This document shows positions 8,778 through 30,983 of a stretch of 64,000 bases of DNA, piece after piece. The notes under the pieces are model-generated. The model saw only the letters and a program-made list of their open reading frames with translations, did no database searches and was not told the origin of the DNA. The number at the start of each line of letters is the position of its first letter. Position 1 is the stretch's first letter. Where the stretch lies: the IMG/VR virus record IMGVR_UViG_3300022752_000015, positions 124,001 through 188,000 of that record; one strand, given 5' to 3'. The translations under genes were made by a program, and so were the position numbers.

Positions 8778-8795
8778 AATAGTTCCACCATTACA

Positions 8796-14597: not shown

Positions 14598-14883
14598 TGT
14601 TCGGTTGTAATTTTTCGTTTACTATGTTGTTAGCTACTAAAAGCATGGCATCGCGGGCGTTCTTTGCGCTTTGTACTAATTCGACAGCAATTGGATCATC
14701 AAATGCAACTGGTGTTTCTAACAACTTTGTCATTCTTCCATAAGAAAAATCAAGCACGTCTAAAGATTCTTCAATTCTTTCAGTCAAATCTTCAAACTGT
14801 TCTAACGTCTGCATGTGCCTCTTTACTAAGAGAAACAAACATGAAAATGTTAAAAGATTAGAAAATATCAAAAAATAAATCAT
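14590..14883 (-). CDS. Small membrane-anchored coiled-coil protein
   Basis: 97 aa; hydrophobic N-terminus MIYFLIFSNLLTFSCLFLLV followed by a heptad-like helix; overlaps both neighbours. Confidence 0.55.
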   Translation of the reverse strand: MIYFLIFSNLLTFSCLFLLVKRHMQTLEQFEDLTERIEESLDVLDFSYGRMTKLLETPVAFDDPIAVELVQSAKNARDAMLLVANNIVNEKLQPNNE

Positions 14884-16040: not shown

Positions 16041-17281
16041 AGAGAATTTACCTCCCAAGCTTTTCTTTGGTCTTTCCAAGTTTCAATCAGTTTCATCAAT
16101 GAAATATCCCAATCAGAAACAATCTTCTTTAGATCATAATCTTTGTGAGCGTGTTCTAATGCTCTCATTCCGACTTGCTTTCTCTTATCAGGACCCCATT
16201 CATACATTTCTAAAAATGCATTTGCTAATTTTTCATGAGTAACTAAATCTTCGTAAATGAAAGGTACCATTTGATTGCCAACCAAAGATTTAACGTCAGG
16301 TTCTAATGCAATCCCATATTGTTCACCAGTCTCTAGATCTTCAACTTGTCTAGTTAACCCGCCGGTTTTAATAGCAATAATGGGCTTTCCACACATCATA
16401 GCTTCTAAAGTGGGTAAACCAAATCCTTCATTAGAACTTCTATTAACGATTGTATCGCATGCCGAATAAACTTCTCTCATTTCATCGAAATCAACTCTCT
16501 TTTTAGAGAATTTTACATGATCTTCAATCTGAAGCATCTCTATGACATGATAAAGATTAGGACCTTCATGATCAAGAGGATCTGTATGCATCAAAAGCGT
16601 AGCTTTTTTATGACCATGCTTTTCTTGCAAAGCATCTAAAAATTGCTTCCAAGACACTAAAATATCACTTGGCATTTTTCTTCTAGCATTTCTAGAGACA
16701 TAAAGAGCCACAAAGTGATCTGCTCTATCGGAACCTAAAATCTTAACTTTATTTTTTCTAGAATTATCTTCAGATAAAGGATAATAGATTTCTTTTGGAA
16801 CTCCATGAGGAATATAGTTGGTTTTTTCTGGAAATCTTTCCTTAACCATTTGATAGGTGGGCCAATTTATACAATTGACTAAATCAGTAGATTCATATAG
16901 CACTTTATTGAATTCTGGCCAAGGACCGTTATCCCATAGATGATTGTATGCGATTGGACATATTTGATGTATTTCATCCTCCATTTCCCAAACCCAAATA
17001 AAAAATCTAGGATCGGTAAATAGCATTAGAGCGTCTGGTCGTTCAGTCGCAAGGACTTGTCGCAAAAGATTTCTGTCACCAAATCCGTTAGTCGGTTTGA
17101 TAATGAAATCTTCATTTACTACAATCGTTCTATAGTCTTCATGCTTCATTGCACCACCAAAGCACTTAAACTTATATTTCCCTGTAGAAATTAGTCCATT
17201 AATCAACCATCTAGCTTGAGTTCCTACTCCGCTCGTAGAAAGTGGGTGATCTGAAAGTAACAATATTGTCTTTTTCTGCAT
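16037..17281 (-). CDS. Glycosyltransferase, GT4 family (GT-B)
   Basis: LSDHPLSTSGVG...VSRNARRK...NEGFGLPTLEAMMCGKPIIA (EX7E motif). Confidence 0.85.
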   Translation of the reverse strand: MQKKTILLLSDHPLSTSGVGTQARWLINGLISTGKYKFKCFGGAMKHEDYRTIVVNEDFIIKPTNGFGDRNLLRQVLATERPDALMLFTDPRFFIWVWEMEDEIHQICPIAYNHLWDNGPWPEFNKVLYESTDLVNCINWPTYQMVKERFPEKTNYIPHGVPKEIYYPLSEDNSRKNKVKILGSDRADHFVALYVSRNARRKMPSDILVSWKQFLDALQEKHGHKKATLLMHTDPLDHEGPNLYHVIEMLQIEDHVKFSKKRVDFDEMREVYSACDTIVNRSSNEGFGLPTLEAMMCGKPIIAIKTGGLTRQVEDLETGEQYGIALEPDVKSLVGNQMVPFIYEDLVTHEKLANAFLEMYEWGPDKRKQVGMRALEHAHKDYDLKKIVSDWDISLMKLIETWKDQRKAWEVNSL

Positions 17282-17341
17282 CAACGATATATTACCTACT
17301 TTTCAAAAGTTGTAATAAAAATTCATCAAACTAACAAAAAA

Positions 17342-18160
17342 TTATGTGCAATGCTCAGTGCCTTTATACTCACAGTATGTGCATGCATCTCTATTTTTGA
17401 TGGCAATGCCTCGTTTGACGGAAGTCAACATGTTTCCAACAACCTTAAGAGATTTCTTAATTGGTACCTCACCAAGAGAAACAGAAAATAACTCGCAATG
17501 TTCTCCTGGTTTTGCTGACTTTTTCAAAAGCACAAAACCGCATCTAACATCCTTGAATGGAACATTAGGATTTTTTTGGCACCAATAGTTTTTGTAAAGA
17601 GCCAGCTGGGCTTTTACCATGTCGTCTGATCTTTTTTCTCGAAACCACCCTCTTATAGTAGTTTTCCAATCGAGAATCCAATAGACTGTTTCTCCTCTTT
17701 TACCCTTGGCTTTAATGACTCCATCAATAAAACCTTTGAATGCATGAGGATGACCTTCAACGGCTTCATAAAGTTGATGCTCTGCATCAACGACTTGCCA
17801 TTCAGGAAACTCTTTATCTAAAAATGCAGGAACCTCAGATAGAATTTGAGATACTTCAACCTTAGCTTTCTCTAAAGCAGATTTAGAAAAATCAGGATTG
17901 TCTTCATGCTTCTTCCAAGCATTGTCTAGATGACTAAACGCGACCTGCTGATCCATCTCTCGAGTCAACAGATATTTTTCGCAAGATGCATGGACAGCGG
18001 TTCCAAAGTCTAAAACAGGAGAAGGTTTAGACAAATCAATCTTTTTAATATGAATTAGATGATGTCTAAAAGAACATTCCTTCCATAACTTTACCTCAGA
18101 AAAAGAAACGTGCGGTTTTCCAGTAGGTAAAGTTTGGAAGGAACTATTATTTTCTTGCAT
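17342..18160 (-). CDS. Cas4/AddB-like PD-(D/E)XK nuclease with 4-Cys Fe-S motif
   Basis: HVSFSEV...C...FGTAVH...AEHQL...FKGFIDGV...ILDWKT...QLALY...CTYCEYKGTEHC. Confidence 0.8.
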   Translation of the reverse strand: MQENNSSFQTLPTGKPHVSFSEVKLWKECSFRHHLIHIKKIDLSKPSPVLDFGTAVHASCEKYLLTREMDQQVAFSHLDNAWKKHEDNPDFSKSALEKAKVEVSQILSEVPAFLDKEFPEWQVVDAEHQLYEAVEGHPHAFKGFIDGVIKAKGKRGETVYWILDWKTTIRGWFREKRSDDMVKAQLALYKNYWCQKNPNVPFKDVRCGFVLLKKSAKPGEHCELFSVSLGEVPIKKSLKVVGNMLTSVKRGIAIKNRDACTYCEYKGTEHCT

Positions 18161-18196
18161 TGTTATAAGGTAATTTACATTACCTTATTAGTTCAA
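18161..18196 (-). promoter_or_regulatory. Sigma70-like promoter, leaderless type, overlapped by a perfect 10-bp inverted repeat
   Basis: TTGAAC-N18-TACCTT-N6-ATG(18160); IR ataaggtaat-ttac-attaccttat at 18165-18188. Confidence 0.55.
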
Positions 18197-19125
18197 TCTT
18201 TGGGTTTTTTAGAAACTGCACGGCCAGACATGCGTTCCCAATCTCTGTCTTTTCTAACCTCAAGATTCTTTTCCCACGCAGCTTTAAGAACAGTCGGTTT
18301 AACCTCAAGATTTTTTGCAACGTCGATCATAGCATTGATGTCCTTAGGGAAACAGTGACCCCCGCTGCCAAAGTCACCATCAGGTCCAGGTACACTCCAG
18401 TGGCTTGATCCTAACCTAGAATCATACTTTGCATATTCAATTACCTTATCATAATCCACATTTAATCCGGATTTATCTAGGGCATTACAAACCTGATACA
18501 TCTCGTTTGCAAACGAAACCTTAACTGTCAGGAAGTTATTAGTGACATATTTCACCATCTCAGCTGTCGTTGACGAAGTTTTGATGAGTGGAACTTTTGG
18601 AAACGCTGTTTGAAAAACTTGTTTCACGGTATTAATCCACGGGCGAGGTCCACCAAGAATAATACGATTTTGATTTCTCATGTCATCTAGAGCGTTGGCC
18701 TCTGTGAGAAATTCTGGATTAAAAACTACATGAAGGCCTTGTTCCGAGAACATCTTGTTCCATCTCTCAGTAGAGCCAGGAGGAACCGTGGATTTTACTA
18801 CAGCAATTCTCTCGCCAGGTAAAGTTGCCAATTGCGAAAGAACACCTTCTACGATAGACAGATCCGCAGATCCGTCATCATACATCGGAGTCGGTAGACA
18901 CACAAAATACACTTTTGAGAAGTTTTCAGATGCTTCACATGACTTTACGAACTCATTTACATTAGTCGGGTGTAATCCTTCTGGTGTTGTTGGTTGCTTT
19001 CCTCCAGTACAGACTTTTCCTGTCTTGTCATGCACCAAGACGTCGAATCCTCTTTCAGCAAAGACAGTAGTAAGAGAGCCGCCAACAAACCCTTGACCTA
19101 CAACAGCAATAGATTGTTTCTTCAT
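18193..19125 (-). CDS. ugd: UDP-glucose/GDP-mannose 6-dehydrogenase family protein (short form)
   Basis: GQGFVG Rossmann motif, CLPTP, KSTVPPG, FNPEFL, AEMVKY, GGHCFPKD (catalytic Cys); only 310 aa. Confidence 0.9.
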   Translation of the reverse strand: MKKQSIAVVGQGFVGGSLTTVFAERGFDVLVHDKTGKVCTGGKQPTTPEGLHPTNVNEFVKSCEASENFSKVYFVCLPTPMYDDGSADLSIVEGVLSQLATLPGERIAVVKSTVPPGSTERWNKMFSEQGLHVVFNPEFLTEANALDDMRNQNRIILGGPRPWINTVKQVFQTAFPKVPLIKTSSTTAEMVKYVTNNFLTVKVSFANEMYQVCNALDKSGLNVDYDKVIEYAKYDSRLGSSHWSVPGPDGDFGSGGHCFPKDINAMIDVAKNLEVKPTVLKAAWEKNLEVRKDRDWERMSGRAVSKKPKD

Positions 19126-19160
19126 ACAAAGATTATAAGAAAAAATAAAAAAATGATCAA
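19126..19160 (-). promoter_or_regulatory. Sigma70-like promoter, leaderless type
   Basis: TTGATC-N17-TATAAT-N6-ATG(19125). Confidence 0.65.
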
Positions 19161-19162
19161 GA

Positions 19163-20068
19163 TTATTCTAACGCCTTAATAACAGTTTTCCATCCAACAT
19201 CATTCTTTATTACGTTCACTGATTCAATTATTTTGTCTTGAAGTTGATTCGCTTCTTTCAAGTTTCTTCTTATCACTTCAATTGCATTCTCAAATGAATC
19301 ATAAGTCATTATCGTAGAGATATTATTTTTAGGAACATAATTTTCTAATTCTTCTTCATAATCTCTAATGCTTATACAACCTCTAGCTGCGGCCTCAACA
19401 TCTTTAATCCACAGTGCATTTGCTGAGATGTTTTTTCCATTCACTTGCCAATTGACTTGCTCATTATGCACATAGATTTTTATATTTGACAAATTTTGCA
19501 AAAATTCTTGGTAAGGAGCAGGTTTCAGCACCTCGACAACAATTCCTTCACTTTTAAGATAATCAAAGAATTTTTTCCTATAAGGATGTAGTTGGCCACA
19601 AAAGCCTAAATCTATTTGTCGTGAAGATAATTCAGGAACAGCAGAACAATATTCTGGCAACATCCACATCTTCACAAATTTAGACCTTATTCCTTGAGAG
19701 TTGATAAAGTCGCTCCACCACTTCGACGTATTTAAGAAGGATAAAACATTCAACTCGTTATAAATCTTATGATATGAACCCTTGTATTGCGAATCATCTT
19801 TGAAAGATTCCCAAGGATCCTGTTCATAGATATAAATTTCTCTATTATCTAAAAACCTCTTAATTGTATGAACGTTGTTGTTTATTGTCCTAAGCTTTAA
19901 ACATGACAATATCCTATCATGGTTTGAAGATATTTTTTTATTCTTCAATATGTCATCAATTGTGCTAAAGGTCAATTCACACTCTTGACTTAAGGTTTTG
20001 AATAACTGATGTTGATAACAGTTAGACTGAATGTAAGACAAGTTGTCAATCAATACATGCAATTTCAT
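19163..20068 (-). CDS. Putative GT-B glycosyltransferase-like protein
   Basis: DLGFCGQLHPYRKKF...YQEFL...IYVHNE...KDVEAAARGC resembles CgeB/Glyco_trans_1_2-type C-termini; glyco-cluster context. Confidence 0.55.
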   Translation of the reverse strand: MKLHVLIDNLSYIQSNCYQHQLFKTLSQECELTFSTIDDILKNKKISSNHDRILSCLKLRTINNNVHTIKRFLDNREIYIYEQDPWESFKDDSQYKGSYHKIYNELNVLSFLNTSKWWSDFINSQGIRSKFVKMWMLPEYCSAVPELSSRQIDLGFCGQLHPYRKKFFDYLKSEGIVVEVLKPAPYQEFLQNLSNIKIYVHNEQVNWQVNGKNISANALWIKDVEAAARGCISIRDYEEELENYVPKNNISTIMTYDSFENAIEVIRRNLKEANQLQDKIIESVNVIKNDVGWKTVIKALE

Positions 20069-20769
20069 CTTTTTACTTTTTCTTTTGAGTAAGTTCTCTT
20101 AGCAATTTCAAAAGCATTTTGAAAATCTTCATCTCTATAATCAACATTTTCGTACGATAAAGACAACTTAAATCCCATTAGACACATGCCTCTGATTCTG
20201 TCAAAATCGTTTTTTTCCCAAGCAGAATAGACCTTATTAAGAATGTCTGATTGGTTCTTTTTACCTCTATGAAAGCCGTAATGAAATGCTTGAGATTCTG
20301 AAGAGTACCAGCAATGCTTCCCGGCAGGTATTAACTTTTCAGGTAATTGATTTCCGCGTAAAACGATATCATGACCCGTGTCTGCTCGATCAGGATACAA
20401 CTTATCAACTTTTGTTGCAACATTGACAGTGTTTTTTAAGCAAGTTAGTCCATATATCAAGCTGTCTGTCAAATAATCGTGTAACCAAGCTTGCGCACCT
20501 GTTACTCTAGAGTTACTTTCAAAAACTTCAACAAAGTTTTTTATAACTTCATTATGAGACAAGACAGTATCGGCATCAACCTTCAAGAAAAGTTGATGAT
20601 CTTTTTTAGCTTCATTCCACGCGGAAAATAATTTTTCATGAGCTTCTTTTTCTGGAAGATTAGAAACAACGTAATGTGTCAGTTCTACGCCTACTTGATT
20701 TTTTATTGATTCTTTACAAGTTTGAAAATCTAACTCTCCATGTTCCATGGTTCCAACAAAAATTTTCAT
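20065..20769 (-). CDS. Putative GT-A (GT2-like) glycosyltransferase
   Basis: FLKVDADTVL DxD motif after a hydrophobic strand; cluster context. Confidence 0.55.
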   Translation of the reverse strand: MKIFVGTMEHGELDFQTCKESIKNQVGVELTHYVVSNLPEKEAHEKLFSAWNEAKKDHQLFLKVDADTVLSHNEVIKNFVEVFESNSRVTGAQAWLHDYLTDSLIYGLTCLKNTVNVATKVDKLYPDRADTGHDIVLRGNQLPEKLIPAGKHCWYSSESQAFHYGFHRGKKNQSDILNKVYSAWEKNDFDRIRGMCLMGFKLSLSYENVDYRDEDFQNAFEIAKRTYSKEKVKR

Positions 20770-22076
20770 TTATCATTCCAATCTTGTCTTAACAAATACA
20801 TACAAATAGAATCATGATATTTTTCTTCTCTATACAACGATTCAACTTGTTTACCTTCTTTTTTGAACCCTAGATTCTTATAGACTTTTTGTCCCACCAC
20901 GTTGTATGATGCTGTTGTCAGCGAAACTCTATGTAAATTTAACGCGTTGAAACATACCTGAAGCATCAGCTTCCACATGAATTTTGCGTATCCTTTTCCT
21001 CTATGATTTTTGTGTATGTCCGCTCCTAACACACAATTGTTATTATTACGATCTATCGAATAGATCTTACAAAAGCCTACTTTTTCTTCATTAACGCAAA
21101 AAATATATCTTTTTTCTTTTTCTTTATGTAAAGAATTCCACCACCTCAAATGAGATTCTAAAGTAATAGGTTGTGGATTTGTCAAATTTTTTAGGACTTC
21201 AGGATCATTGTGCAGATCTACTAACCAATCATGATCATCGTCACAAACTTCTCTTAAAGAAAACAAGTCTTCTTTCTCACAAAAATGAGAATCTACAACT
21301 GAATAGAATTGACTAGAGATTTCAGAATTTTTAAACTTATGACTCATTGAACCTCTTTGATGTCCTACAAAGGGTAAATTATCTAATTGATACTCTTCAT
21401 GATAATCGTTGTTAGTTTTTATTATTTTTGCGTTTTTTGTAGGCTTTTCGTGAGTCAATATTTTATAAGAAATACTGTTTTCGTGTAGGAAACTAGGTAT
21501 TTGCCAGCCTGTATCTCTTAAAACTCGAAAGCCTATAGGTAATTGATATATTTCTGCTTCTAAATCGTTAGATATATCTAAATGAGATCCTTTATGAGGG
21601 GTAACGTCTATGCCAGAAAAATCTACGTTTTTTGACATAGCAAACCAAGTAAAGTTTGGTTTATTTTTATAAGTTTGAACGTTTCCAGAACCAGATGAAA
21701 ATCCGCCATAAGCTTCATATGATGAACCTAAAATATCAACTTTTGATAATTCATCTACAAGTAATTTATCCCATTCTTTAACTAACATGACTGTATCTGA
21801 ATCAGCAATCACATTAATTGAATTATTTTTTGATTTTATTTTAGAAAGAGCTAATTTAATTGCCTCACAATGTCCTCTAGTCCCTCTTTCGTTGTTAACA
21901 AAATGAGAAACTATTGATTTTGAGCTATGAAATTTGTTAAAAGAATATTCATCTAAACAGTAAGCATGAAATTTTAACTTGTTCTTATTACTAAGAAGTT
22001 GACTATAGTTTTTTTGCATATATTCAAAATAAGCAATTGAATTTTCGCTGACTGTAACATGAATATTAATTTTCAT
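20766..22076 (-). CDS. Fusion: GT-A-like N-terminal domain + GNAT (PseH/RimL-like) N-acetyltransferase
   Basis: N-part VIADSDTVML (DxD); C-part LREV...HNDPEV...HLRWW...VGFC...HRGKGYAK...LNLHRVSL...YKNLGFKKEG, a typical GNAT acetyl-CoA motif. Confidence 0.7.
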   Translation of the reverse strand: MKINIHVTVSENSIAYFEYMQKNYSQLLSNKNKLKFHAYCLDEYSFNKFHSSKSIVSHFVNNERGTRGHCEAIKLALSKIKSKNNSINVIADSDTVMLVKEWDKLLVDELSKVDILGSSYEAYGGFSSGSGNVQTYKNKPNFTWFAMSKNVDFSGIDVTPHKGSHLDISNDLEAEIYQLPIGFRVLRDTGWQIPSFLHENSISYKILTHEKPTKNAKIIKTNNDYHEEYQLDNLPFVGHQRGSMSHKFKNSEISSQFYSVVDSHFCEKEDLFSLREVCDDDHDWLVDLHNDPEVLKNLTNPQPITLESHLRWWNSLHKEKEKRYIFCVNEEKVGFCKIYSIDRNNNNCVLGADIHKNHRGKGYAKFMWKLMLQVCFNALNLHRVSLTTASYNVVGQKVYKNLGFKKEGKQVESLYREEKYHDSICMYLLRQDWNDK

Positions 22077-23211
22077 TAATAATTTCTTTCACTTTTGTTG
22101 CTATTTGCAATATGTCATTTTCATCAAGCCACCATCCACAAGGCAAAGAAAATTGATTTTTTGAAAATTCTTCTACGCCAGGTAAATCAACGTTATGATC
22201 TTTAAATGCAGTATATTCATGATTAGGAACGTGTACTACTCCCGCATGTATTCCTGATTCATTCAACAACTTCAATAGTTGATCTCTTGTAATTTTAGGA
22301 TGTTTTAATTTCATAGTATAAACCCAAAATGTAGAGTTCGATCCTTCTGGAACTAATACTGGGCATAAAAACTTTTCTTGTTCAAAGATAGAATTATACA
22401 ATTTAGCATTTTTTACATGAGATGTCACAATTTTATCAAGATATTCAATCTGTGACAATCCAATTGCAGCTGACACATTATTCATGTTAAATTTGTAACC
22501 AGCTTCAAGTATATCTACGTCCCACTGCTGGCCTTTCCAATTTCCTGAAGCATCTTTTGCTACATCTCTATCTAACCCAAACCATTTCATAGACTTAGAT
22601 CGTTTATAATCTTCGTCAGACTTACTTATCAAAGCTCCACCGTCGCCTGTTGTGACGTGTTTAATAGCTTGAAAGCTGTAACAAACAAAATCGCACCAGT
22701 CATGTAACGGTAAATTCTCGTAAGATGCTCCAAAAGCATGGGCGGCATCCAAAATAAGCTTGATATTTTTTTCTTGGCAAATTTTGCTTAATTCTCTAAG
22801 TCTTGGAGGCGTGCCTGCCCAGGCAACAGCAATAACAGCTTTAGTTTTTGAAGTAATCTTATTGATAACGTCATCTGGATTTATCATTCCATTTTCAGGA
22901 TCTACGTCGGCCCAAACTACTTTTGCTCCTAAATTATCAATAGGAGTATTTGTAGCAACACAGGTCATAGAAGTAGAAATAACTTCATCATCTTTTGTTA
23001 CGTTTGAAAGACGTAGAGCCATCGTTAAGGCTGAAGTGCAACTGTTGACTAATATCAAATTTTTTGATTTTAGATATAATTTTAATTTTTCTGTCAGTTC
23101 AGTTACTTGGACACCTTCATTTATAAATCCTGACTCAAAAACTTTCTTAATTTCTTCTAAGGCTTTATCGACAGGTATATGAACTTTAAAAAGATGATAT
23201 TGTTTATTCAT
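22066..23211 (-). CDS. DegT/DnrJ/EryC1/StrS PLP-dependent sugar aminotransferase
   Basis: VNSCTSAL...DAAHAFGA...YSFQAIKHVTTGDGGAL...GYKFNMNNVSAAIG; start moved to ATG 23211. Confidence 0.9.
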   Translation of the reverse strand: MNKQYHLFKVHIPVDKALEEIKKVFESGFINEGVQVTELTEKLKLYLKSKNLILVNSCTSALTMALRLSNVTKDDEVISTSMTCVATNTPIDNLGAKVVWADVDPENGMINPDDVINKITSKTKAVIAVAWAGTPPRLRELSKICQEKNIKLILDAAHAFGASYENLPLHDWCDFVCYSFQAIKHVTTGDGGALISKSDEDYKRSKSMKWFGLDRDVAKDASGNWKGQQWDVDILEAGYKFNMNNVSAAIGLSQIEYLDKIVTSHVKNAKLYNSIFEQEKFLCPVLVPEGSNSTFWVYTMKLKHPKITRDQLLKLLNESGIHAGVVHVPNHEYTAFKDHNVDLPGVEEFSKNQFSLPCGWWLDENDILQIATKVKEIINEN

Positions 23212-23212
23212 T

Positions 23213-24238
23213 TTAGTTCTTTCTATTAGTTGCAATCTCTTCTATCTTTAACCCTTGAAAATTATCTAAAGACATGTCAATAATTCCAAGCTCATTAAGT
23301 TTGGCAAAAAGTTGTTCTTTAGTCATGACATCGTCGGCACTAGTGTAAGTGAATCTGTTATTAGTTCCAGACTGATATGCAGGTCCTATTACGTAGTGAG
23401 TTTCTACATCTTTTGTCCTGACGGATTCAGATTCGTTAACAAGATCTTCATGTTTTTTCTCGCCTGGTCTCAAACCAATTATTTTAATTGGTTTTTTATA
23501 TAAGCTTGAAAAAATTTCTGCCAAATCTCCTATTTTCATCGCTGGTATTTTAGGGATCCAAGTTTCACCACTCTCTCCTCTTTTTAAAGCTTCTAAAATT
23601 AGATCTACACTGTCATCTAAAGTCATAACAAATCTAGTCATGTTTGGATCTGTTACTGTCAAATTTTCAGAATACTCAGCTTGATACTTAAAAAGAGGAA
23701 TTATACTTCCTCTAGATTCTAGAACATTTCCATACCTAGTGCACAAAAACTTAACGCCAGTTGAGTCATTCTTTGATTGACTAGTTACAAGACGTTCAGA
23801 TATCCCTTTACACATTCCGTAAACATTTACAGGAGAGCAAGCCTTGTCTGTACTGACAAATAAAACTTTTTCAACTTTCCAGTCTGATGCCCAAGATTGA
23901 GAAATATCTTTCACGGATTTAACGACATTTTGAGTTCCTAACAAATTTGTCATTACGCTTTCAAAAGGGCTAAGCTCACAAGTGTCAACTTGTTTTAGAG
24001 CAGCCGCAACAATTATGATTTCAGGTTTGTAATGAAGTATGACTTCTTTTACTCGATTATAATCTCTAATGTCTCCAACAAAAAACTCTACATCCGTAGA
24101 AGAATTAAGTTCATTCTTTATGGTCCAATGTTTGGCTTCATCTCTAGAATAAACTGCGATTTTATCTCCGTTTATCAAAAATCTAGAAATTAATTTTTTT
24201 CCTAATGAACCTGTTCCACCAAATATAAGATATTTCAT
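23213..24238 (-). CDS. UDP-GlcNAc 4,6-dehydratase (PseB/FnlA/CapD-like, Polysacc_synt_2 family)
   Basis: FGGTGSLG, YSRDEAK, GDIRD, AAALKQV, STDKACSPVNVYGMCK, RYGNVLESRGSIIP, GLRPGEK. Confidence 0.9.
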   Translation of the reverse strand: MKYLIFGGTGSLGKKLISRFLINGDKIAVYSRDEAKHWTIKNELNSSTDVEFFVGDIRDYNRVKEVILHYKPEIIIVAAALKQVDTCELSPFESVMTNLLGTQNVVKSVKDISQSWASDWKVEKVLFVSTDKACSPVNVYGMCKGISERLVTSQSKNDSTGVKFLCTRYGNVLESRGSIIPLFKYQAEYSENLTVTDPNMTRFVMTLDDSVDLILEALKRGESGETWIPKIPAMKIGDLAEIFSSLYKKPIKIIGLRPGEKKHEDLVNESESVRTKDVETHYVIGPAYQSGTNNRFTYTSADDVMTKEQLFAKLNELGIIDMSLDNFQGLKIEEIATNRKN

Positions 24239-24275
24239 CGTTCAAATTATAACTTTTGCAAAAAAAACTGTTCAA
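24239..24275 (-). promoter_or_regulatory. Sigma70-like promoter, leaderless type
   Basis: TTGAAC-N18-TATAAT-N7-ATG(24238). Confidence 0.65.
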
Positions 24276-25099
24276 AGTTTAGTAACATCATTTAAAGAAA
24301 TTTCAGATATTGTATCAGATCTAGTAGGTCTATAATCAATTTCTAAATTGTAATTTCTGCTTCCGTTTACAACAACATTGACATTTTCATTTCCTAGCTT
24401 AGAATGAAATACTCCGCCATCTAAAAGTGCTGAAATCTTGTATCTATCGTAGTATAACTTTTGATAATCAGTTTCGCTAAATTTTTTTAAAGAAGAAAGA
24501 TCTAAAAAAACTTCTTTTATAGCTTGAATTCTACTTAAAGCTGGTAGTTTTGCTAAAAAATTGCATTTATAAATTCCTTCATAATTTGTCTTATGAAACT
24601 CTACTCTTTTGTTTTGAATAAAATTATTTTGAGTCACCCATGCATATTTCCTTGAATTTTTTTTTGGACTTCCTTTATCATAAAGATGTCTTTCTGCAAC
24701 AAAAAATTCTTCTGTTCTTACAAACCCTACATCATCATTAGAATCTAAAAATGACTCACACATCTCTAGCTTTTTTAAAGAATCATCAAAATGGATTAAA
24801 TCAGATTCAATTATGTAAAGATATTTGTAATCTCTACTCATTAACGTTTGATAATTTTTCAAACACCAATGTATTGCACTCCAAAGTCCTACGTTTAGTT
24901 TAGATTGATAAACATTATTAAAGTTGTCTGTCAGCAATTTTACGCTACCTGTATAAGAAGAAGCGTTGTCAAATACCAACATGTTATGTAACGTTTTTTT
25001 ATCAAATACATTACACAAATTATTAACAACTTGATTCAAAATTTCAAATCTTGTAATATCTTTCGTACAAGTAACCAAAAGAAATAAAGTATCTTTCAT
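24272..25099 (-). CDS. Putative GT2-like glycosyltransferase
   Basis: LVFDNAS...NVGL...YLYIIESD; start moved to ATG 25099 (ATGA overlap). Confidence 0.55.
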   Translation of the reverse strand: MKDTLFLLVTCTKDITRFEILNQVVNNLCNVFDKKTLHNMLVFDNASSYTGSVKLLTDNFNNVYQSKLNVGLWSAIHWCLKNYQTLMSRDYKYLYIIESDLIHFDDSLKKLEMCESFLDSNDDVGFVRTEEFFVAERHLYDKGSPKKNSRKYAWVTQNNFIQNKRVEFHKTNYEGIYKCNFLAKLPALSRIQAIKEVFLDLSSLKKFSETDYQKLYYDRYKISALLDGGVFHSKLGNENVNVVVNGSRNYNLEIDYRPTRSDTISEISLNDVTKL

Positions 25100-26229
25100 G
25101 TTAGTTCTCCAATAAAATTTTCCCAATTTTCCCAATAAGAATTATTAAGAATCTCTTTTTGAAGTTCTAACATCCCATTTCTTAATTTTTTAACGTAAGA
25201 ATCATCAAATAACAATTTTTCAATCGAGTTTGTTGCTTTAATTGCATCATCAACAAGAATACAATTAATGTTATCTATAAGATATTTTGAAGCATTTGAA
25301 GAATTAACGTATCTATTAGTCGTAATAATAGGAGTTCCAGAATTTAAGCAGTAATAAAAAACTCCTCCGCCCCAATCAGTCTGTTTAAAATGAACAGCCG
25401 CTTTTAATCCAGAAGTAATCTTATAAGATTGCCTAGGCGTGATTGTAGGAAATTTACCAGTTACGCCATTTTCTTTTGAATATCTGATGTCAGCTCCTGC
25501 GCTACGGACGTTTCCGCCAAAGTTTATTACTTCTGGAAGATTGATTTCCTTAAGTAAGGAATTCATTTTTTTGAAAATCTTATAGTCGTCTGGTTGTCTT
25601 ACTTCAAAGTTGTGATTAAACGAAGCAAAAGAAACGTTTTCGTAACCTGAAATAGAGACATTCGTGATATCTAGTAATGACTTTTCGAATGGTAGGCAAA
25701 AGACATTAACGTTGTTTACGTCTACATTTTTATTTTCATAGTTTGCAGGAATAAATTTGGCGGCATTTCTTGTTTTATAATTTCCAGGCGAACTATCCCA
25801 AGCATTCATCGTTGAAGATACCCATTTTGCATTTGGGAAATATTCTGAAGCTATTTTGAAATATTGGTATAAAGAACTCTCGCCGCCTCGTAAAGTGTGG
25901 AATACATCAATTGAACATTTTTGTTTTGTCAAATCTATGATTTGACAAGAGATGTCTTCTTCATAAAGATTATGAGATTTAAAATCTTTCAAAAAGTAAT
26001 CTTCTCCAAAAAAAGAAAAATTTTCTTCAAATGGATAAATTTCTAAATTTCTTTTTGTTTTGTCTTCAAAAGATTTACAAAGCATAGCAGGCCAAGTTGC
26101 TATTCTTTGCCAGTTTAGACCAAGAGTTCCTTTTTTAGGAACAAAAACCTTATGTCCCAATTTTGAATAGTGGTAGATCATAGAAGCTAGTCCACTTCTA
26201 TCATCTGTAGGAAATATTAAGACGTTCAT
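25096..26229 (-). CDS. Putative GT-B glycosyltransferase-like protein
   Basis: C-terminal HFKQTDWGGGVFYYCLNSGTPIIT...YLIDNINCILVD resembles a degenerate GT4 donor-binding region; cluster context. Confidence 0.5.
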   Translation of the reverse strand: MNVLIFPTDDRSGLASMIYHYSKLGHKVFVPKKGTLGLNWQRIATWPAMLCKSFEDKTKRNLEIYPFEENFSFFGEDYFLKDFKSHNLYEEDISCQIIDLTKQKCSIDVFHTLRGGESSLYQYFKIASEYFPNAKWVSSTMNAWDSSPGNYKTRNAAKFIPANYENKNVDVNNVNVFCLPFEKSLLDITNVSISGYENVSFASFNHNFEVRQPDDYKIFKKMNSLLKEINLPEVINFGGNVRSAGADIRYSKENGVTGKFPTITPRQSYKITSGLKAAVHFKQTDWGGGVFYYCLNSGTPIITTNRYVNSSNASKYLIDNINCILVDDAIKATNSIEKLLFDDSYVKKLRNGMLELQKEILNNSYWENWENFIGELT

Positions 26230-27143
26230 CAAAATTCCTCTTCAGGTCCTTCTAAAAGAATTTTATTTTGTGGATATTTTACCTGGTCTTTATTAACCAC
26301 TTTGTATTCCCACCCGTCTGATTTACAGACATCAGTAAACCCTAATGGAATCCTAGAATTTTGCTTTTGTTGATATTGTTCATCAGACAATCTTTCATAG
26401 TACATACCAGAAGCAGATGGAGCATCTAAATAATAACCATATCTCTTATTGCCTCTAATGAAAGCGTATCCTCCTCTAGGATCATTCCATACTGGGGCGA
26501 ACAGTGGAACCCAGCTAGAATAGTTCGTTTGATCTTTTAACTTCAATTTTACTTCATTGTCGTACCAGTCTTCTGATCTTCCCCAATAATCTTGAGTCTG
26601 AGGCCAATCGACTGGGTACTTTCCGATTAAGTCAAAGACTTCTTTTTTGAAAAATCCCATCGTAGGGAAATGATTATCTGTTGGTTTGTAATATTTGTAA
26701 TTTTCAAGCTTAAAAACTTCACATCTATCAGCATCATACCTGTTTGATACAGTCGAGTTTCTAACAGCATTTACTTCTAATGCTTTCGCCTCATCAAAGT
26801 TGACAAAATCTTGAACTGTTTTTTCAAAAACTTCATTATTAACAATCAATTGCAAATCATCTTGTAAGAATAAAATCACATCATTTTTTGCGGTCTCGAT
26901 GATCATGTTCTTAGCGACGTATTCATCATTTACCCAATTTCTTTCTTTGGGATCTCTCAAAAATAAATCGTCTATCAAATTAGATTTTTTAAGATTAAAA
27001 AGATAATCTTGCAAACCTTTTTCAGTGCTACAATTATCAATAACAATAATTTGATTGTTGCTTTTTACATTTTCTAAAGACTTTAAAAGAGACTTAGCAT
27101 ACTTTAGTCTATTAAAAGTTGTAACTGCAATAGTAATTGACAT
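26229..27143 (-). CDS. Glycosyltransferase, GT2 family
   Basis: ITIAVTTFNRL...IIVIDNCSTE...AKN...ILFLQDD...YWGRSED. Confidence 0.8.
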   Translation of the reverse strand: MSITIAVTTFNRLKYAKSLLKSLENVKSNNQIIVIDNCSTEKGLQDYLFNLKKSNLIDDLFLRDPKERNWVNDEYVAKNMIIETAKNDVILFLQDDLQLIVNNEVFEKTVQDFVNFDEAKALEVNAVRNSTVSNRYDADRCEVFKLENYKYYKPTDNHFPTMGFFKKEVFDLIGKYPVDWPQTQDYWGRSEDWYDNEVKLKLKDQTNYSSWVPLFAPVWNDPRGGYAFIRGNKRYGYYLDAPSASGMYYERLSDEQYQQKQNSRIPLGFTDVCKSDGWEYKVVNKDQVKYPQNKILLEGPEEEF

Positions 27144-27164
27144 ATTTGCCTCCTTATCTACTCT

Positions 27165-28067
27165 TCAAATAATGGATATTAAATTTCTATATCCTTGATA
27201 TCCTTGTGGTAATTTCCAGGATTCAACGTTGGGGATTGAAGGAATAGCTAAGCTAACATCGTCTTGAATAGAATGAAGAGGAAGAACTTGAGTAGCTATT
27301 CCTATGTTTCTTGAAACTACTGGAACATTTAATAATCCACATTCTATCAAAGATTGAGGACCTCCTTCACACCTTGCTGTCACAGGATATAAATCAAGAG
27401 TTTGATATAACTCGTTTATTACATCGTGAGGTGGTCGTTCGACATATGTGAATGGTATTCCAGATTTTTTTAGTCTAGAGATTATATACTGTCTTCTCCA
27501 TCCAGCCAAAACAACATGCAAGTCAGGATTCTTTTTAACGACTTTTTCTAGATAATCGGCCAGCAAATCTGGACCTTTTTCTAATTTAGGACTTATCAAA
27601 TCAGATCCTTCTGTGTCTCTTTGAAAAGATCCTATCAAGTATGAATTCAACGGCAAATTATATTTTTTTCTTAAATCGTTTTTACTTCCAGTTGCTTTCC
27701 ATATCTTTTGATTTGCCCAATATGGTACCACGAATACTTCTTTTTTTGTTAATCTACTTATAAAGTCTTTAGTCTGTTCATTGTAAACGTGATACGCTGT
27801 CGTTAACTTATCTCTAAACATAAATTCTTGATAAGCTAAAGAATTAAATTTTTCAGGAACAATGTGGTGAACGGTGGTCAAAACTTTTTTCCCGTTTAAC
27901 CAACCTGATTGATACAGATTTTGCCAAGCCCAATCAGCTAATAACCAAACTACATTTGCGTCTTTTGGGTGATTAACACTTATGTCTGAATTATCTTCAT
28001 TCCATTCTTTGACAAATCTATCGACTATCCAATCCTCAGATGGAGGTAAGACAAACACCTTATTCAT
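27165..28067 (-). CDS. Glycosyltransferase, GT4-like
   Basis: GSFQRD...EKGPDLL...YPVTARCEGGPQSLIECGLLNVPVVS; start moved to ATG 28067 (ATGA overlap). Confidence 0.8.
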   Translation of the reverse strand: MNKVFVLPPSEDWIVDRFVKEWNEDNSDISVNHPKDANVVWLLADWAWQNLYQSGWLNGKKVLTTVHHIVPEKFNSLAYQEFMFRDKLTTAYHVYNEQTKDFISRLTKKEVFVVPYWANQKIWKATGSKNDLRKKYNLPLNSYLIGSFQRDTEGSDLISPKLEKGPDLLADYLEKVVKKNPDLHVVLAGWRRQYIISRLKKSGIPFTYVERPPHDVINELYQTLDLYPVTARCEGGPQSLIECGLLNVPVVSRNIGIATQVLPLHSIQDDVSLAIPSIPNVESWKLPQGYQGYRNLISII

Positions 28068-28963
28068 TGAAAAATTATATTCCAAAAATGTTTCATTGAA
28101 TCGGACCATCTTAAAATATCATAAGAATTATTCTTCAAATCTCTGCTAAGCAACAACTTTTCAATTTCAAAAAAATTCTTATAGACATGATCTATGCCTG
28201 CGAATTCTACAGATCCGCCACCTTCAACATGAACGTATGTTGGCAAACCTACAGCAATAGATTCTAAAACATGATTAGGTCCTGGGTCATGTCTTGATCC
28301 ACTTATATAAACATCATGTTTTGCTAACTCTTTTGCTAACTCTTCTCCGTGAATTGGAGGAATTATTTTTGTATTGTTAAAGGTACCTCTTTCTCTTCCG
28401 ATGTAAGTAAATTCAATATTTCTTTCTTTCGTGGTCAAATAATCAATAAACTCGTATACGTCAAATCCCTTTAAAGAATTGTTAGACCAATGATGAGTTA
28501 CTACTTTGAGTTTATTATCTGAACGAGTATATGAGTTGTTCTTTCTATTTTCAATGAAAGTGTCATCTACTCCGTTGTGCACAACGTATTGTTTCTTACA
28601 ATTCCACCCTTTTTTATTGAAGTAATCTTTCATCCAGTTACTAACAAAAATTGTTTTTGTATTTAAGATGCTACATTGTAAGAGCAAACTATCCATGTGT
28701 TCAGTACCTTTTCTAGCATCACATTCATTGATTCTTTGAACAACTGGAATTTTTTTAACAGAAGACACAAATTTGTAGACGTCATTTGCGTCAAACATTC
28801 CATTTTCTTTTCTAGGATCCATTAGAAATATGGAATCAACATCTTCTGACAGATTATTAGTAATGGTTATGCCAGAAGGAACAGTTGCATATACTGCTCT
28901 AACAAAATTGTTTCCGCCGCCCCAAGGTCCGTCTATTGGCTTTCTATTTATGGCTATTTTCAT
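28064..28963 (-). CDS. Glycosyltransferase, GT4-like
   Basis: GPWGGGNNF...FVSNW...VVHNGVD...KGFD...DPGPNHVLESIAVGLP. Confidence 0.8.
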   Translation of the reverse strand: MKIAINRKPIDGPWGGGNNFVRAVYATVPSGITITNNLSEDVDSIFLMDPRKENGMFDANDVYKFVSSVKKIPVVQRINECDARKGTEHMDSLLLQCSILNTKTIFVSNWMKDYFNKKGWNCKKQYVVHNGVDDTFIENRKNNSYTRSDNKLKVVTHHWSNNSLKGFDVYEFIDYLTTKERNIEFTYIGRERGTFNNTKIIPPIHGEELAKELAKHDVYISGSRHDPGPNHVLESIAVGLPTYVHVEGGGSVEFAGIDHVYKNFFEIEKLLLSRDLKNNSYDILRWSDSMKHFWNIIFQ

Positions 28964-30979: not shown

Positions 30980-30983
30980 TAGA

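What the first reader, a model, noticed from the sequence alone, without database searches (positions are those of the whole stretch)
20766..24238. Three-gene acetamido-dideoxysugar pathway ending in a GT-acetyltransferase fusion, with its own promoter
Seen: a PseB/FnlA-like UDP-GlcNAc 4,6-dehydratase, then a DegT-type aminotransferase, then a protein with an N-terminal DxD GT-like domain fused to a PseH-like GNAT; a TTGAAC/TATAAT promoter sits at 24239-24275. Known: dehydratase + aminotransferase + acetyltransferase makes 4-acetamido-4,6-dideoxy sugars (bacillosamine or the pseudaminic acid precursor), and Mimivirus uses an analogous viosamine route with an acetyltransferase-GT fusion. No PseG/I/F-like genes are seen here. 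Inference: the di-N-acetyl-6-deoxy sugar is itself the donor, made and transferred by one fused enzyme.
Basis: partly seen in the sequence, partly recalled or inferred. Interest (0 to 1): 0.7.

Follow-up and report, generated by a model that had tools for sequence, protein, structure and literature searches.

The report
Phage amino-sugar pathway with fused glycosyltransferase
A large uncultured freshwater phage carries a set of genes that most likely makes a rare doubly N-acetylated 6-deoxy sugar and attaches it to something, and in this phage alone the last sugar-making enzyme has recently merged with a neighbouring sugar-transferring enzyme.

Summary
On the minus strand lie a PseB/Mg534-type UDP-GlcNAc 4,6-dehydratase (23213-24238), a DegT C4-aminotransferase (22066-23211) and a 436-aa protein. 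Residues 1-268 of that protein are a true GT-A glycosyltransferase fold (AF2 pLDDT 95.5, Z 13.6, invariant DxD). Residues 274-430 are a PseH-like GNAT. The fusion is real: contigs from four other studies cross the junction without indels. It is also recent and unique. The closest syntenic relatives have the same two genes side by side but separate, in one case in the same frame. No PseG/I/F is encoded in this record or in an 86%-complete relative, so the UDP-diacetamido-trideoxyhexose is probably used directly as a donor. The promoter call is supported. TATAAT sits 6-8 nt before the ATG of 9 of 180 genes (0.19 expected), which suggests leaderless transcripts.

The three genes are not a stand-alone unit. 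They open a five-gene block that holds two more glycosyltransferases, inside an 18-kb island of 20 co-directional genes with 9-11 glycosyltransferases in all. Apart from one 97-aa ORF, all 20 products are soluble, and the island lies next to baseplate genes. So "made and transferred by one fused enzyme" is plausible but unproven. The acceptor, possibly virion protein, is inferred only.

The parts
24246..24275 (-). Promoter-like element TTGAAC-18 nt-TATAAT. The -10 box ends 7 nt before the dehydratase ATG (leaderless-type).
   Evidence: Read directly and found by the scan. It is one of 9 TATAAT boxes lying 6-8 nt before a gene ATG in the 212.8-kb record, against 0.19 expected. Relatives keep TAnAAT 6-10 nt before their dehydratase ATG.
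23213..24238 (-). UDP-GlcNAc 4,6-dehydratase of the short soluble, inverting (PseB/FlaA1/Mg534) type, 341 aa.
   Evidence: Polysacc_synt_2 2e-82. PseB model 276 bits, under its 408-bit cut-off. Best solved relative is 4TQG (Megavirus Mg534), 5e-80. It keeps the TDK motif and the Tyr of YxxxK, where CapE/FnlA-type enzymes have Met. PglF (retaining type) scores only 134 bits.
22066..23211 (-). PLP-dependent NDP-4-keto-sugar C4 aminotransferase, 381 aa from ATG 23211.
   Evidence: DegT_DnrJ_EryC1 3e-81. PseC model is the best NCBIfam hit at 232 bits, under its 423-bit cut-off; ArnB 190 bits, LegC 183 bits. PDB: AtmS13 2e-55, ArnB 2e-39, PseC 3e-32, PglE 4e-32. The SFQAIK...GDGG lysine motif is present.
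21273..22076 (-). Residues 1-268 of the fusion: GT-A fold glycosyltransferase domain of a family not in any catalogue searched.
   Evidence: No Pfam, NCBIfam or PHROG hit. AF2 pLDDT 95.5, pTM 0.93. All top Foldseek and VIA matches are GT-A glycosyltransferases, Z up to 13.6. Invariant H69, D92xD94, W102, D103, E228, H239, R241, G242. The family is small: 199 clusters in 1.8 billion representatives.
20766..21272 (-). Residues 269-436 of the fusion: GNAT N-acetyltransferase domain (PseH-like).
   Evidence: Acetyltransf_3 1e-18. PseH model 65.8 bits, under its 93.1-bit cut-off. RGKGYA acetyl-CoA motif. It is 55-69% identical, end to end, to the stand-alone GNATs that lie just downstream of the aminotransferase in relatives. 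The junction at about 21250-21295 is crossed without gaps by contigs of runs X3, X5, X8 and X10.
20065..20769 (-). p234: second GT-A (GT2-like) glycosyltransferase. Its ATG overlaps the fusion's stop codon.
   Evidence: No family hit. AF2 pLDDT 93.9. Foldseek top hits are SunS/ThuS, WrtF and TarP, all GT-A. Invariant D65-A-D67. It lies downstream of the GNAT gene in most phage relatives, directly after it in most of those.
19163..20068 (-). p301: probable GT-B (Glyco_trans_1_2-like) glycosyltransferase, overlapping p234's stop codon.
   Evidence: Language-model feature search only, score 0.97 with Glyco_trans_1_2 clusters. This is a lead, not a test. Conserved in relatives.
19132..19160 (-). 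Second promoter-like element TTGATC-17 nt-TATAAT, 6 nt before the next gene's ATG. It marks the end of the five-gene block.
18193..19125 (-). Short UDP-glucose-dehydrogenase-like protein: N-terminal and central domains only.
   Evidence: Conserved in this short form in relatives.
14880..32906 (-). The surrounding glycosylation island: 20 co-directional ORFs. Nine are well-supported glycosyltransferases and two more are weaker candidates. The only transmembrane-like segment is in the 97-aa ORF 14590-14883 beside it, which is not counted among the 20.

Best explanation
The window comes from an uncultured freshwater jumbo phage: a 212.8-kb record estimated 59% complete. The finding is the head of a five-gene block that follows a promoter-like site, inside an 18-kb island of soluble glycosylation enzymes.

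Proposed pathway:
1. The dehydratase converts host UDP-GlcNAc to a UDP-2-acetamido-2,6-dideoxy-hex-4-ulose. It probably inverts C5, as Mg534 and PseB do.
2. The DegT enzyme aminates C4.
3. The GNAT domain N-acetylates that amine. The product is a UDP-2,4-diacetamido-2,4,6-trideoxyhexose, most likely in the L-altro configuration. The stereochemistry is not shown.
4. Neither this record nor an 86%-complete relative encodes PseG, PseI or PseF. The UDP-sugar is therefore not turned into a nonulosonic acid. It is used as a glycosyl donor by one of the co-transcribed soluble GT-A enzymes.
5. The best single candidate is the GT-A domain covalently joined to the GNAT.
6. The glycan is built in the cytoplasm without a lipid carrier, on a soluble acceptor. 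Virion (tail or baseplate or capsid) protein is the leading guess.

The GT-A::GNAT protein arose recently by in-frame merger of two neighbouring genes.

Shown: gene identities, folds, motifs, reality and recency of the fusion, synteny, absence of PseG/I/F, and positional promoter enrichment.

Inferred: substrate, stereochemistry, which transferase uses the sugar, and the acceptor.
For: Enzyme families and motifs.

GT-A fold of the N-domain.

Start/stop overlaps link the aminotransferase, the fusion, p234 and p301, and one base separates the dehydratase stop from the aminotransferase ATG.

In 11 distinct phage contexts, the GT-A gene lies inside or beside the dehydratase-aminotransferase-GNAT set (the two L024/L025 loci have no GNAT match). 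The gene order varies among them, which argues for a functional link rather than frozen synteny. Two bacterial-looking clusters that carry the GT-A family also carry related genes: L004 has a Polysacc_synt_2 dehydratase and a GNAT, and L008 has a dehydratase and a DegT aminotransferase.

The fusion junction is intact in four non-source runs from four studies.

NeuB, CTP_transf_3 and PseG models find nothing in this record, and NeuB and CTP_transf_3 find nothing in five relatives, including one 86% complete.

No transmembrane-like segment in any island enzyme.

The island abuts a gp25-like protein, a wedge-like baseplate protein and a lectin-domain protein on the same strand.

Promoter class.
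Against: - All three Pse equivalog models score below their curated cut-offs.
- By single-sequence comparison the GNAT is as close to SpeG-type polyamine acetyltransferases (7e-16) as to anything. No solved PseH appears at 1e-5.
- The aminotransferase's nearest solved relatives act on 4-keto pentoses or dTDP sugars.
- The fusion is unique to this lineage. It needs only the loss of a stop codon and a 15-nt spacer, so it may be neutral.
- Two more glycosyltransferases share the block.
- The GT-A family also occurs in eight viral loci with no dehydratase, aminotransferase or GNAT within 8 kb.
- Complex prediction for the split pair gave no answer.
- The record is only 59% complete.
- No evidence on expression or on the acceptor.
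Confidence: 0.5

Rival explanations
1. The fusion is a neutral accident. The GNAT domain does the same job as its stand-alone orthologues, acetylating the UDP-4-amino sugar. The fused GT-A domain transfers some other sugar. The diacetamido sugar is transferred by p234 or another island transferase.
For: In all relatives the two genes are separate, and in L006 they are in frame and 15 nt apart. p234 is a GT-A with a DxD motif and follows the GNAT gene in most relatives. In four relatives the GT-A gene sits before the aminotransferase, not next to the GNAT. The GT-A family also occurs without the pathway, and is fused to a methyltransferase in L005.
Against: The fused form persists unchanged in populations sampled by four other studies. 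The GT-A gene keeps company with the pathway through several rearrangements. None of this tells which transferase uses which donor.
Confidence: 0.3
2. The three enzymes are an auxiliary metabolic booster. They feed the early steps of the host's own pseudaminic acid (or related nonulosonic acid) pathway, and the host supplies PseG/I/F.
For: PseB, PseC and PseH are the best-scoring NCBIfam models for the three proteins. The record is 59% complete, and the host is unknown.
Against: All three scores are below the equivalog cut-offs. No NeuB or CTP_transf_3 in this record or in five relatives, one of them 86% complete. The genes are embedded among 9-11 glycosyltransferases and translationally coupled to three of them. 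One relative pairs the same dehydratase with an RmlD-like 4-reductase, as in the Megavirus RhaNAc route, which is not a Pse context (PMC10117803).
Confidence: 0.07
3. The GNAT acts after transfer or on a non-sugar amine. Either the GT-A domain transfers the 4-amino sugar and the GNAT then acetylates the glycan, or the GNAT acetylates a polyamine or a protein.
For: The closest solved sequences are SpeG/diamine acetyltransferases. Fusions of a glycosyltransferase with a modifying domain, such as the methyltransferase fusion in L005, often modify the transferred residue (general knowledge).
Against: The orthologous stand-alone GNAT lies just downstream of the aminotransferase gene in most of the phage relatives. 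The PseH model outscores the SpeG model (65.8 against 52.5 bits).
Confidence: 0.06
4. The island hypermodifies the phage DNA with a glycan rather than decorating protein.
For: A conserved PD-(D/E)XK exonuclease-like gene sits inside the island. Phage glycosyltransferases that build glycans on DNA bases are known (bioRxiv 10.1101/2023.12.21.572611, seen).
Against: Nine to eleven transferases plus an amino-sugar pathway is far more than the few glycosyltransferases I recall in described DNA systems (from memory, not checked against the preprint). The island adjoins baseplate genes on the same strand. I did not search the record for 5-hydroxymethyl-pyrimidine-forming enzymes.
Confidence: 0.05

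Closest known systems
First three steps of the CMP-pseudaminic acid pathway (PseB, PseC, PseH of Campylobacter jejuni and Helicobacter pylori)
   Same: The same three enzyme superfamilies in the same chemical order: a short soluble Polysacc_synt_2 dehydratase with TDK and YxxxK, a DegT C4-aminotransferase, and a GNAT N-acetyltransferase. The PseB, PseC and PseH models are the top NCBIfam hits.
   Different: All three scores are below the equivalog cut-offs (276 vs 408, 232 vs 423, 66 vs 93). PseG, PseI and PseF are absent. The GNAT is fused to a glycosyltransferase. The setting is a phage glycosyltransferase island, not a flagellin glycosylation locus.
Megavirus chilensis Mg534 (PDB 4TQG) and the fibril glycosylation clusters of Megavirinae giant viruses
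   Same: [quoted passage not shown] It is the closest solved relative of the dehydratase (5e-80; PMC10117803). Both are virus-encoded clusters that combine nucleotide-sugar enzymes with many glycosyltransferases. One giant-virus cluster even lists a short UGDH (PMC10117803).
   Different: In Megavirus the 4-keto sugar is reduced (Mg535) to RhaNAc/QuiNAc, not aminated. This virus is a tailed phage. The dehydratase clade is large in metagenomes, with many members more similar than Mg534, so no special phage-giant virus link is implied.
Mimivirus L142 (bifunctional N-acetyltransferase plus putative glycosyltransferase of the Vio4NAc route)
   Same: One polypeptide joins the last sugar-making step, 4-N-acetylation of a UDP-4-amino-6-deoxy sugar, to a predicted GT. 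The GT is speculated to transfer that sugar. L142 is also found split into two genes in some strains (PMC10117803, PMC9614988).
   Different: The domain order is reversed: the acetyltransferase is N-terminal in L142. The L142 acetyltransferase was modelled on Neisseria PglB and predicted to be a homotrimer with a catalytic His (PMC9614988). I take that to be a hexapeptide-repeat fold, from memory; it is not a GNAT. The substrate comes from UDP-Glc, not UDP-GlcNAc. The resemblance is analogous, not homologous.
Neisseria PglB (bifunctional bacillosamine acetyltransferase / phosphoglycosyltransferase) and the C. jejuni PglF/E/D bacillosamine pathway
   Same: Both make a UDP-2,4-diacetamido-2,4,6-trideoxyhexose that is used directly as a donor. 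In Neisseria the acetylating and transferring activities sit on one protein. That architecture is from my own knowledge; PMC9614988 confirms only that PglB acetylates C4 of bacillosamine.
   Different: PglF is the long membrane-anchored retaining dehydratase and scores only 134 bits here. The Pgl acetyltransferases are hexapeptide-repeat proteins, by my recollection. The Pgl transferase is a membrane phosphoglycosyltransferase acting on undecaprenyl phosphate. Here everything is soluble, and no Bac_transf family appeared in the Pfam scan of the island's proteins.
Virion glycosylation in mycobacteriophages (Freeman et al. 2023, as cited in PMC12619734)
   Same: Phage-encoded glycosyltransferases that decorate capsid and tail proteins in the cytoplasm. 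This is the nearest known precedent for the acceptor I propose.
   Different: As far as I recall, those phages carry few transferases and no nucleotide-sugar pathway of their own. The acceptor here is not demonstrated.

Membership tests
[quoted passage not shown] | Score at or above the curated equivalog cut-off (407.75 bits) | tested here: not met
   276.5 bits.
PseB/Mg534-type short soluble Polysacc_synt_2 dehydratases | Polysacc_synt_2 domain, N-terminal GxxGxxG, TDK motif, and Tyr (not Met) in YxxxK | tested here: met
   PF02719 2e-82. The alignment to 4TQG shows STDKAC and VYGMCK, whereas CapE/4J2O have Met at the Tyr position.
PseB/Mg534-type dehydratases | Inversion at C5 of the 4-keto-6-deoxy product | not testable with these tools
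   Inferred only from closer similarity to Mg534, CapE and PseB (272-199 bits) than to retaining PglF (134 bits).
PseC (TIGR03588) | Score at or above the curated cut-off (423.5 bits) | tested here: not met
   232.5 bits. Still the best NCBIfam model, ahead of ArnB at 190 and LegC at 183.
DegT/DnrJ/EryC1 sugar aminotransferases | Full-length fold-type I domain with the PLP-binding lysine | tested here: met
   PF01041 3e-81 over residues 25-382. The SFQAIKH...GDGG motif is present. Assigning this lysine as the PLP lysine rests on my knowledge of the family.
PseH (TIGR03585) | Score at or above the curated cut-off (93.1 bits) | tested here: not met
   65.8 bits. Stand-alone orthologues in relatives score 53-73 bits. 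No solved PseH among PDB hits at 1e-5.
GNAT superfamily | GNAT domain with the R/Q-x-x-G-x-G/A acetyl-CoA motif | tested here: met
   Acetyltransf_3 1e-18 and Acetyltransf_1 3e-12. RGKGYA in the sequence.
Complete pseudaminic acid pathway | PseG (UDP-sugar hydrolase), PseI/NeuB (synthase) and PseF (CMP-transferase) present | tested here: not met
   No match in this record. No NeuB or CTP_transf_3 match in five relatives, one of them 86% complete. Caveat: this record is 59% complete.
GT-A fold glycosyltransferases | Single Rossmann-like alpha/beta/alpha domain with a DxD motif at the end of a central strand | tested here: met
   AF2 pLDDT 95.5. VIA Z 13.6-11.9, all GT-A transferases (GT6, GT8, GT24, GT31, GT2). 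Foldseek probability 1.00. D92-S-D94 follows strand 86-91 and is invariant in 40 sequences.
GT-A fold glycosyltransferases | Glycosyl transfer activity and donor identity | not testable with these tools
   No CAZy, Pfam, NCBIfam or PHROG family match. The top structural neighbours mix retaining and inverting families.
Bacillosamine (Pgl) pathway | PglF-type retaining dehydratase, hexapeptide-repeat acetyltransferase PglD, and membrane phosphoglycosyltransferase PglC | tested here: not met
   PglF is a distant hit. The acetyltransferase is a GNAT. No Hexapep or Bac_transf family appeared in the Pfam scan of the island's proteins, and there are no transmembrane segments.
Mimivirus L142-type bifunctional enzyme | N-terminal PglB-like acetyltransferase plus C-terminal GT | tested here: not met
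   The order here is GT then acetyltransferase, and the acetyltransferase is a GNAT (PMC9614988). Functional analogy only.

The most novel reading that the evidence does not exclude
A lineage of freshwater jumbo phages carries a giant-virus-style, lipid-carrier-independent glycan assembly line: about 10 soluble glycosyltransferases plus its own amino-sugar pathway. It decorates virion proteins with a glycan containing an L-configured 2,4-diacetamido-2,4,6-trideoxyhexose. To my knowledge that sugar is otherwise known only as a transient intermediate on the way to pseudaminic acid. In this phage, the newly formed GT-A::GNAT enzyme channels the sugar straight from synthesis to transfer.
Probability: 0.2. 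Interest if true: 0.7.

Novelty: new variant of a known kind. Interest (0 to 1): 0.45.

Why it matters
Tailed phages are only beginning to be recognised as making their own glycans. Large autonomous glycosylation clusters have so far been a hallmark of giant viruses. This island would extend that to a widespread freshwater phage: at least 18 DNA runs hold 37-100% of the sampled words of this 4.4-kb stretch. It also offers three practical things.
1. A GT-A family absent from Pfam, NCBIfam and PHROGs, for which there is now a high-confidence model and a conserved motif set.
2. A natural fused/split pair (this phage against L006-type relatives) for testing whether joining the last biosynthetic step to a transferase gives substrate channelling.
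3. A candidate enzymatic route to a rare diacetamido-trideoxy sugar donor.
The three pathway enzymes themselves are ordinary members of well-known families.

Tried and rejected
- Generic sigma-70 scan of 13.5-33.4 kb: 69 sites against 76.5 expected. I first took this to mean the promoter was chance. A position-specific analysis reversed that reading. The longer composite motif AACA-N15-18-TAnAAT-N3-12-ATG is not recurrent in the genome (3 found, 4.6 expected).
- Megablast of the island against 50,697 GenBank phages: no match. A protein search with the fusion found only unrelated GNATs. The dehydratase has one real phage hit, a 635-kb uncultured phage at 42% identity.
- Search for other long proteins with this GNAT, meaning other fusions: none.
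- hhalign of p234 against the GT-A family: no similarity. The two GT-A proteins are not recent paralogues.
- Complex prediction for the split GT-A and GNAT of L006: 'no answer'. This is not evidence either way.
- Runs labelled RNA (X19, X20) were judged probably DNA and cover little of the stretch. There are no expression or 5'-end data.
- The 'moraphage' paper (PMC12619734) describes aquatic jumbo phages with core glycosyltransferases. I could not show that this phage belongs to that lineage. SD-like motifs peak 4-10 nt before ATGs and the promoters look sigma-70-like. As far as I know, both features fit poorly with the Bacteroidota hosts predicted for most moraphages.
- tRNA scan of the window: none.
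- I did not model the full-length fusion.

Full report
**What the window is.** The window is bases 124001-188000 of a single 212,804-bp IMG/VR virus record with an estimated completeness of 59%. Several proteins mark it as a tailed jumbo phage:
- a baseplate wedge protein, a phrog_2488 helicase and a PhoH-like protein;
- a gp25-like protein;
- helicase relatives in 300-640-kb phages.

GC content is about 30-37% over most of the window. No GenBank phage shares DNA with the region. At least 18 DNA runs, mostly freshwater (also aquaculture, reservoir, lagoon and sediment), hold 37-100% of its sampled words.

**The observation.** The three ORFs are on the minus strand at the stated coordinates.

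*Dehydratase (23213-24238, 341 aa).*
- It matches Polysacc_synt_2 at 2e-82.
- The PseB model gives 276 bits and the FnlA model 221 bits, both under their cut-offs.
- Its nearest solved relative is 4TQG (5e-80). [quoted passage not shown]
- The alignment shows the TDK motif and the Tyr of YxxxK. CapE/FnlA-type enzymes have Met at that position.
- Retaining PglF scores far lower, at 134 bits.
- The clade is very large in metagenomes: more than 7000 proteins at E<=1e-40, many 64-70% identical. Mg534 is therefore only the nearest solved structure, not a sign of a special link to giant viruses.

*Aminotransferase.*
- It matches DegT_DnrJ_EryC1 at 3e-81. The PseC model is the best NCBIfam model at 232 bits, under its cut-off.
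- It most likely starts at ATG 23211, one base after the dehydratase stop. That gives 381 aa, as in relatives.

*The 436-aa protein (20766-22076).*
- Its C-terminal part (274-430) is a GNAT domain. Acetyltransf_3 scores 1e-18 and the PseH model 65.8 bits, under the 93.1-bit cut-off. An RGKGYA acetyl-CoA motif is present.
- Its first 268 residues match nothing in Pfam, NCBIfam or PHROGs.

**The N-terminal domain is a glycosyltransferase fold.**
- An exhaustive HMMER search found a small family: 199 clusters among 1.8 billion representatives.
- Most members are stand-alone proteins of 260-310 aa. Some are fused to Methyltransf_24 or to an unknown C-terminal domain.
- Forty sequences share invariant H69, D92-x-D94, W102, D103, E228, H239, R241 and G242.
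- AlphaFold2 on that alignment gave pLDDT 95.5 and pTM 0.93. The DxD motif sits directly after strand 86-91.
- Every top match is a GT-A glycosyltransferase, in Foldseek against the PDB, AlphaFold DB clusters and BFVD, and in VIA-align (Z 13.6-11.9). Matches include BoGT6a, LARGE1, WrtF, UGGT, ColGalT1, LgtC, B3GNT2 and SpsA.
- The neighbours mix retaining and inverting families, so mechanism and donor cannot be read from the fold.

**The fusion is real, recent and unique.**
- The junction lies at residues about 262-275 (window about 21250-21295).
- Logan contigs of four runs from four other studies (X3, X5, X8, X10) cross it without any gap or mismatch. No indel was seen anywhere in 18900-24500.
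- The closest syntenic relatives (L006, L010, L023, L009) have the same order: dehydratase, aminotransferase, GT-A, GNAT, p234, p301, short UGDH, PD-(D/E)XK, two GT4 genes. In them, GT-A (about 270 aa) and GNAT (about 160 aa) are separate genes 15-41 nt apart.
- In L006 the two genes are in the same frame, so loss of the stop codon and spacer is enough to fuse them.
- The GNAT domain here is 55-69% identical, end to end, to those stand-alone GNATs.
- A search for other long proteins with this GNAT found none.

**Context across relatives.**
- In 11 distinct phage contexts the GT-A gene lies within or beside the dehydratase-aminotransferase-GNAT set, but at different places.
  - It sits between the aminotransferase and the GNAT in this window, L006, L009, L010, L019 and L023.
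  - It sits between the dehydratase and the aminotransferase in L002, L005, L007 and L015.
  - It sits a few genes away in L018 and in ERZ1426827.
  - In L024/L025 it is divergently oriented next to the dehydratase and aminotransferase, and no GNAT match was found there.
- Persistent company through rearrangement supports a functional link.
- Two bacterial-type polysaccharide clusters with the family also hold related genes. L004 has a Polysacc_synt_2 dehydratase and a GNAT, and L008 has a dehydratase and a DegT aminotransferase.
- Against a strict link, eight viral loci carry a 442-aa variant of the family with no such genes within 8 kb.

**The unit is larger than three genes.**
- The fusion's stop codon overlaps the ATG of a 234-aa protein, whose stop overlaps the ATG of a 301-aa protein.
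- p234 has no family hit. It folds with pLDDT 93.9 into a GT-A fold with an invariant D65-A-D67. Its top matches are the SunS/ThuS peptide S-glycosyltransferases, WrtF and TarP.
- p301 resembles Glyco_trans_1_2 (GT-B) proteins. This rests on a language-model feature search only and is a lead, not a test.
- The surrounding 18 kb (14880-32906) holds 20 co-directional ORFs.
  - Seven have clear GT2 or GT1/GT4 domains and one has a weak hit.
  - With the two fold-assigned GT-A proteins, that makes nine well-supported glycosyltransferases. The weak hit and p301 would bring the total to eleven.
- None of these 20 ORFs has a transmembrane-like segment. The only such segment is in the 97-aa ORF (14590-14883) just downstream of the island.
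- No polyprenyl-phosphate transferase family appeared in the Pfam scan. This points to cytoplasmic assembly on a soluble acceptor.
- Directly downstream on the same strand lie a weak late-sigma-like gene, gp25-like and wedge-like baseplate genes, and an 1166-aa protein with a ConA-like lectin domain.
- Virion protein is therefore my leading guess for the acceptor. This is inference only.

**No route to a nonulosonic acid.**
- The NeuB/PseI, CTP_transf_3/PseF and PseG models find nothing in the record.
- NeuB and CTP_transf_3 also find nothing in five related records, including one of 324 kb that is 86% complete.
- One relative (L005) adds an RmlD-like 4-reductase after the dehydratase, as in the Megavirus RhaNAc route. 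This fits an L-configured 4-keto intermediate (PMC10117803).
- The most economical reading is that the UDP-2,4-diacetamido-2,4,6-trideoxyhexose is itself a glycosyl donor.

**The promoter.**
- The TTGAAC-18-TATAAT site exists.
- A generic scan finds no excess of such sites (69 against 76.5 expected).
- A positional analysis changes the picture.
  - TATAAT occurs only 149 times on both strands of the record.
  - Nine of those copies lie 6-8 nt before the ATG of one of 180 called genes, against 0.19 expected (P about 7e-13). The bin was chosen after I had seen the data.
- The dehydratase site and the site before the UGDH-like gene (19132-19160) both belong to this class.
- Relatives at 57-85% dehydratase identity keep TAnAAT 6-10 nt before their dehydratase ATG.
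- This geometry implies leaderless or near-leaderless transcripts.
- The transcription unit would run from 24238 to 19163, which is five genes.
- No 5'-end data exist. The runs labelled RNA appear to be DNA.

**Comparison with known systems.**
- The chemistry matches PseB/PseC/PseH, but all three equivalog cut-offs are missed and the rest of the pathway is absent. These are Pse-like enzymes, not members of a Pse pathway.
- The Pgl bacillosamine pathway differs in three ways. Its dehydratase is the retaining type. Its acetyltransferase fold differs, by my recollection. Its transferase is membrane-bound.
- Mimivirus L142 is a true functional analogue and, like this case, exists both fused and split (PMC10117803). 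Its domain order is reversed. Its acetyltransferase was modelled on Neisseria PglB and predicted to be a trimer (PMC9614988). It is not a GNAT.
- Neisseria PglB, as I recall it, is another precedent for acetylation and transfer on one protein.

**Verdict.**
- The pathway assignment is solid at the family level.
- The product's stereochemistry, the transferase that uses it and the acceptor are inferred.
- The fusion is a recent in-frame merger that may or may not bring channelling.
- The novelty lies in three things: an uncatalogued GT-A family, its lineage-specific fusion to the GNAT, and a large island of soluble glycosylation enzymes in a widespread freshwater jumbo phage.
- Complex prediction for the split pair gave no answer and is not used as evidence.

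Noticed in passing
window 18193-19125 (-): UDP-glucose-dehydrogenase-like protein of 310 aa. It has only the NAD-binding and central domains. It keeps the catalytic-Cys motif GGHCFPKD but lacks the C-terminal UDP-sugar-binding domain. The same short form (310-349 aa) is conserved in the phage relatives whose gene calls were read. A giant-virus cluster also lists a 268-aa UGDH (PMC10117803). How it could bind its substrate is unexplained.
   Followed up: partly
window 17342-18160 (-): A PD-(D/E)XK (Cas4/RecB-like exonuclease) gene sits in the middle of the glycosylation island. It is kept at the same place, at 78-83% identity, in L006, L009, L010 and L023. Its role among sugar enzymes is unknown.
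   Followed up: partly
whole record; in the window 24246-24251, 19132-19137 and 30983-30988 (-): TATAAT lies 6-8 nt before the ATG of 9 of 180 genes, against 0.19 expected. This suggests a class of promoters that give leaderless mRNAs. SD-like motifs peak 4-10 nt before other genes' ATGs, so both modes of translation initiation seem to be in use.
   Followed up: partly
window 13812-14597 (-): A 261-aa protein with a weak match (1.3e-5) to T4 gp55-like late sigma factors (phrog_234). It lies between the glycosylation island and the baseplate genes. It could be the factor that reads the TATAAT-only sites.
   Followed up: no
window 1883-5383 (-): An 1166-aa protein with a ConA-like lectin/glucanase domain (Laminin_G_3, 3e-10), next to gp25-like and wedge-like baseplate genes. 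It is a candidate receptor-binding or glycan-binding tail protein.
   Followed up: no
L012-L014, L016, L017, L020-L022 (match at about 8001-8820 in each): The same GT-A family occurs in other IMG/VR contigs with no dehydratase, aminotransferase or GNAT within 8 kb. In the two loci whose ORFs were listed (L014, L017) it is the N-terminal part of a 442-aa ORF, so it has an unassigned C-terminal extension of about 170 aa. Proteins P0035, P0038 and P0039 have a similar extension.
   Followed up: partly
L005 8970-17337: A relative's island has the GT-A domain fused to Methyltransf_24 instead. It adds an RmlD-like 4-reductase, a UDP-galactopyranose mutase (GLF) and a Fringe-like GT31. The island's sugar repertoire varies between lineages, much as in giant-virus clades.
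   Followed up: partly
window 20560-20632 (p234 gene): The variants that run X5 shows against the window are nearly all spaced by multiples of three bases. This is the pattern expected for third-position (synonymous) differences under purifying selection.
   Followed up: no
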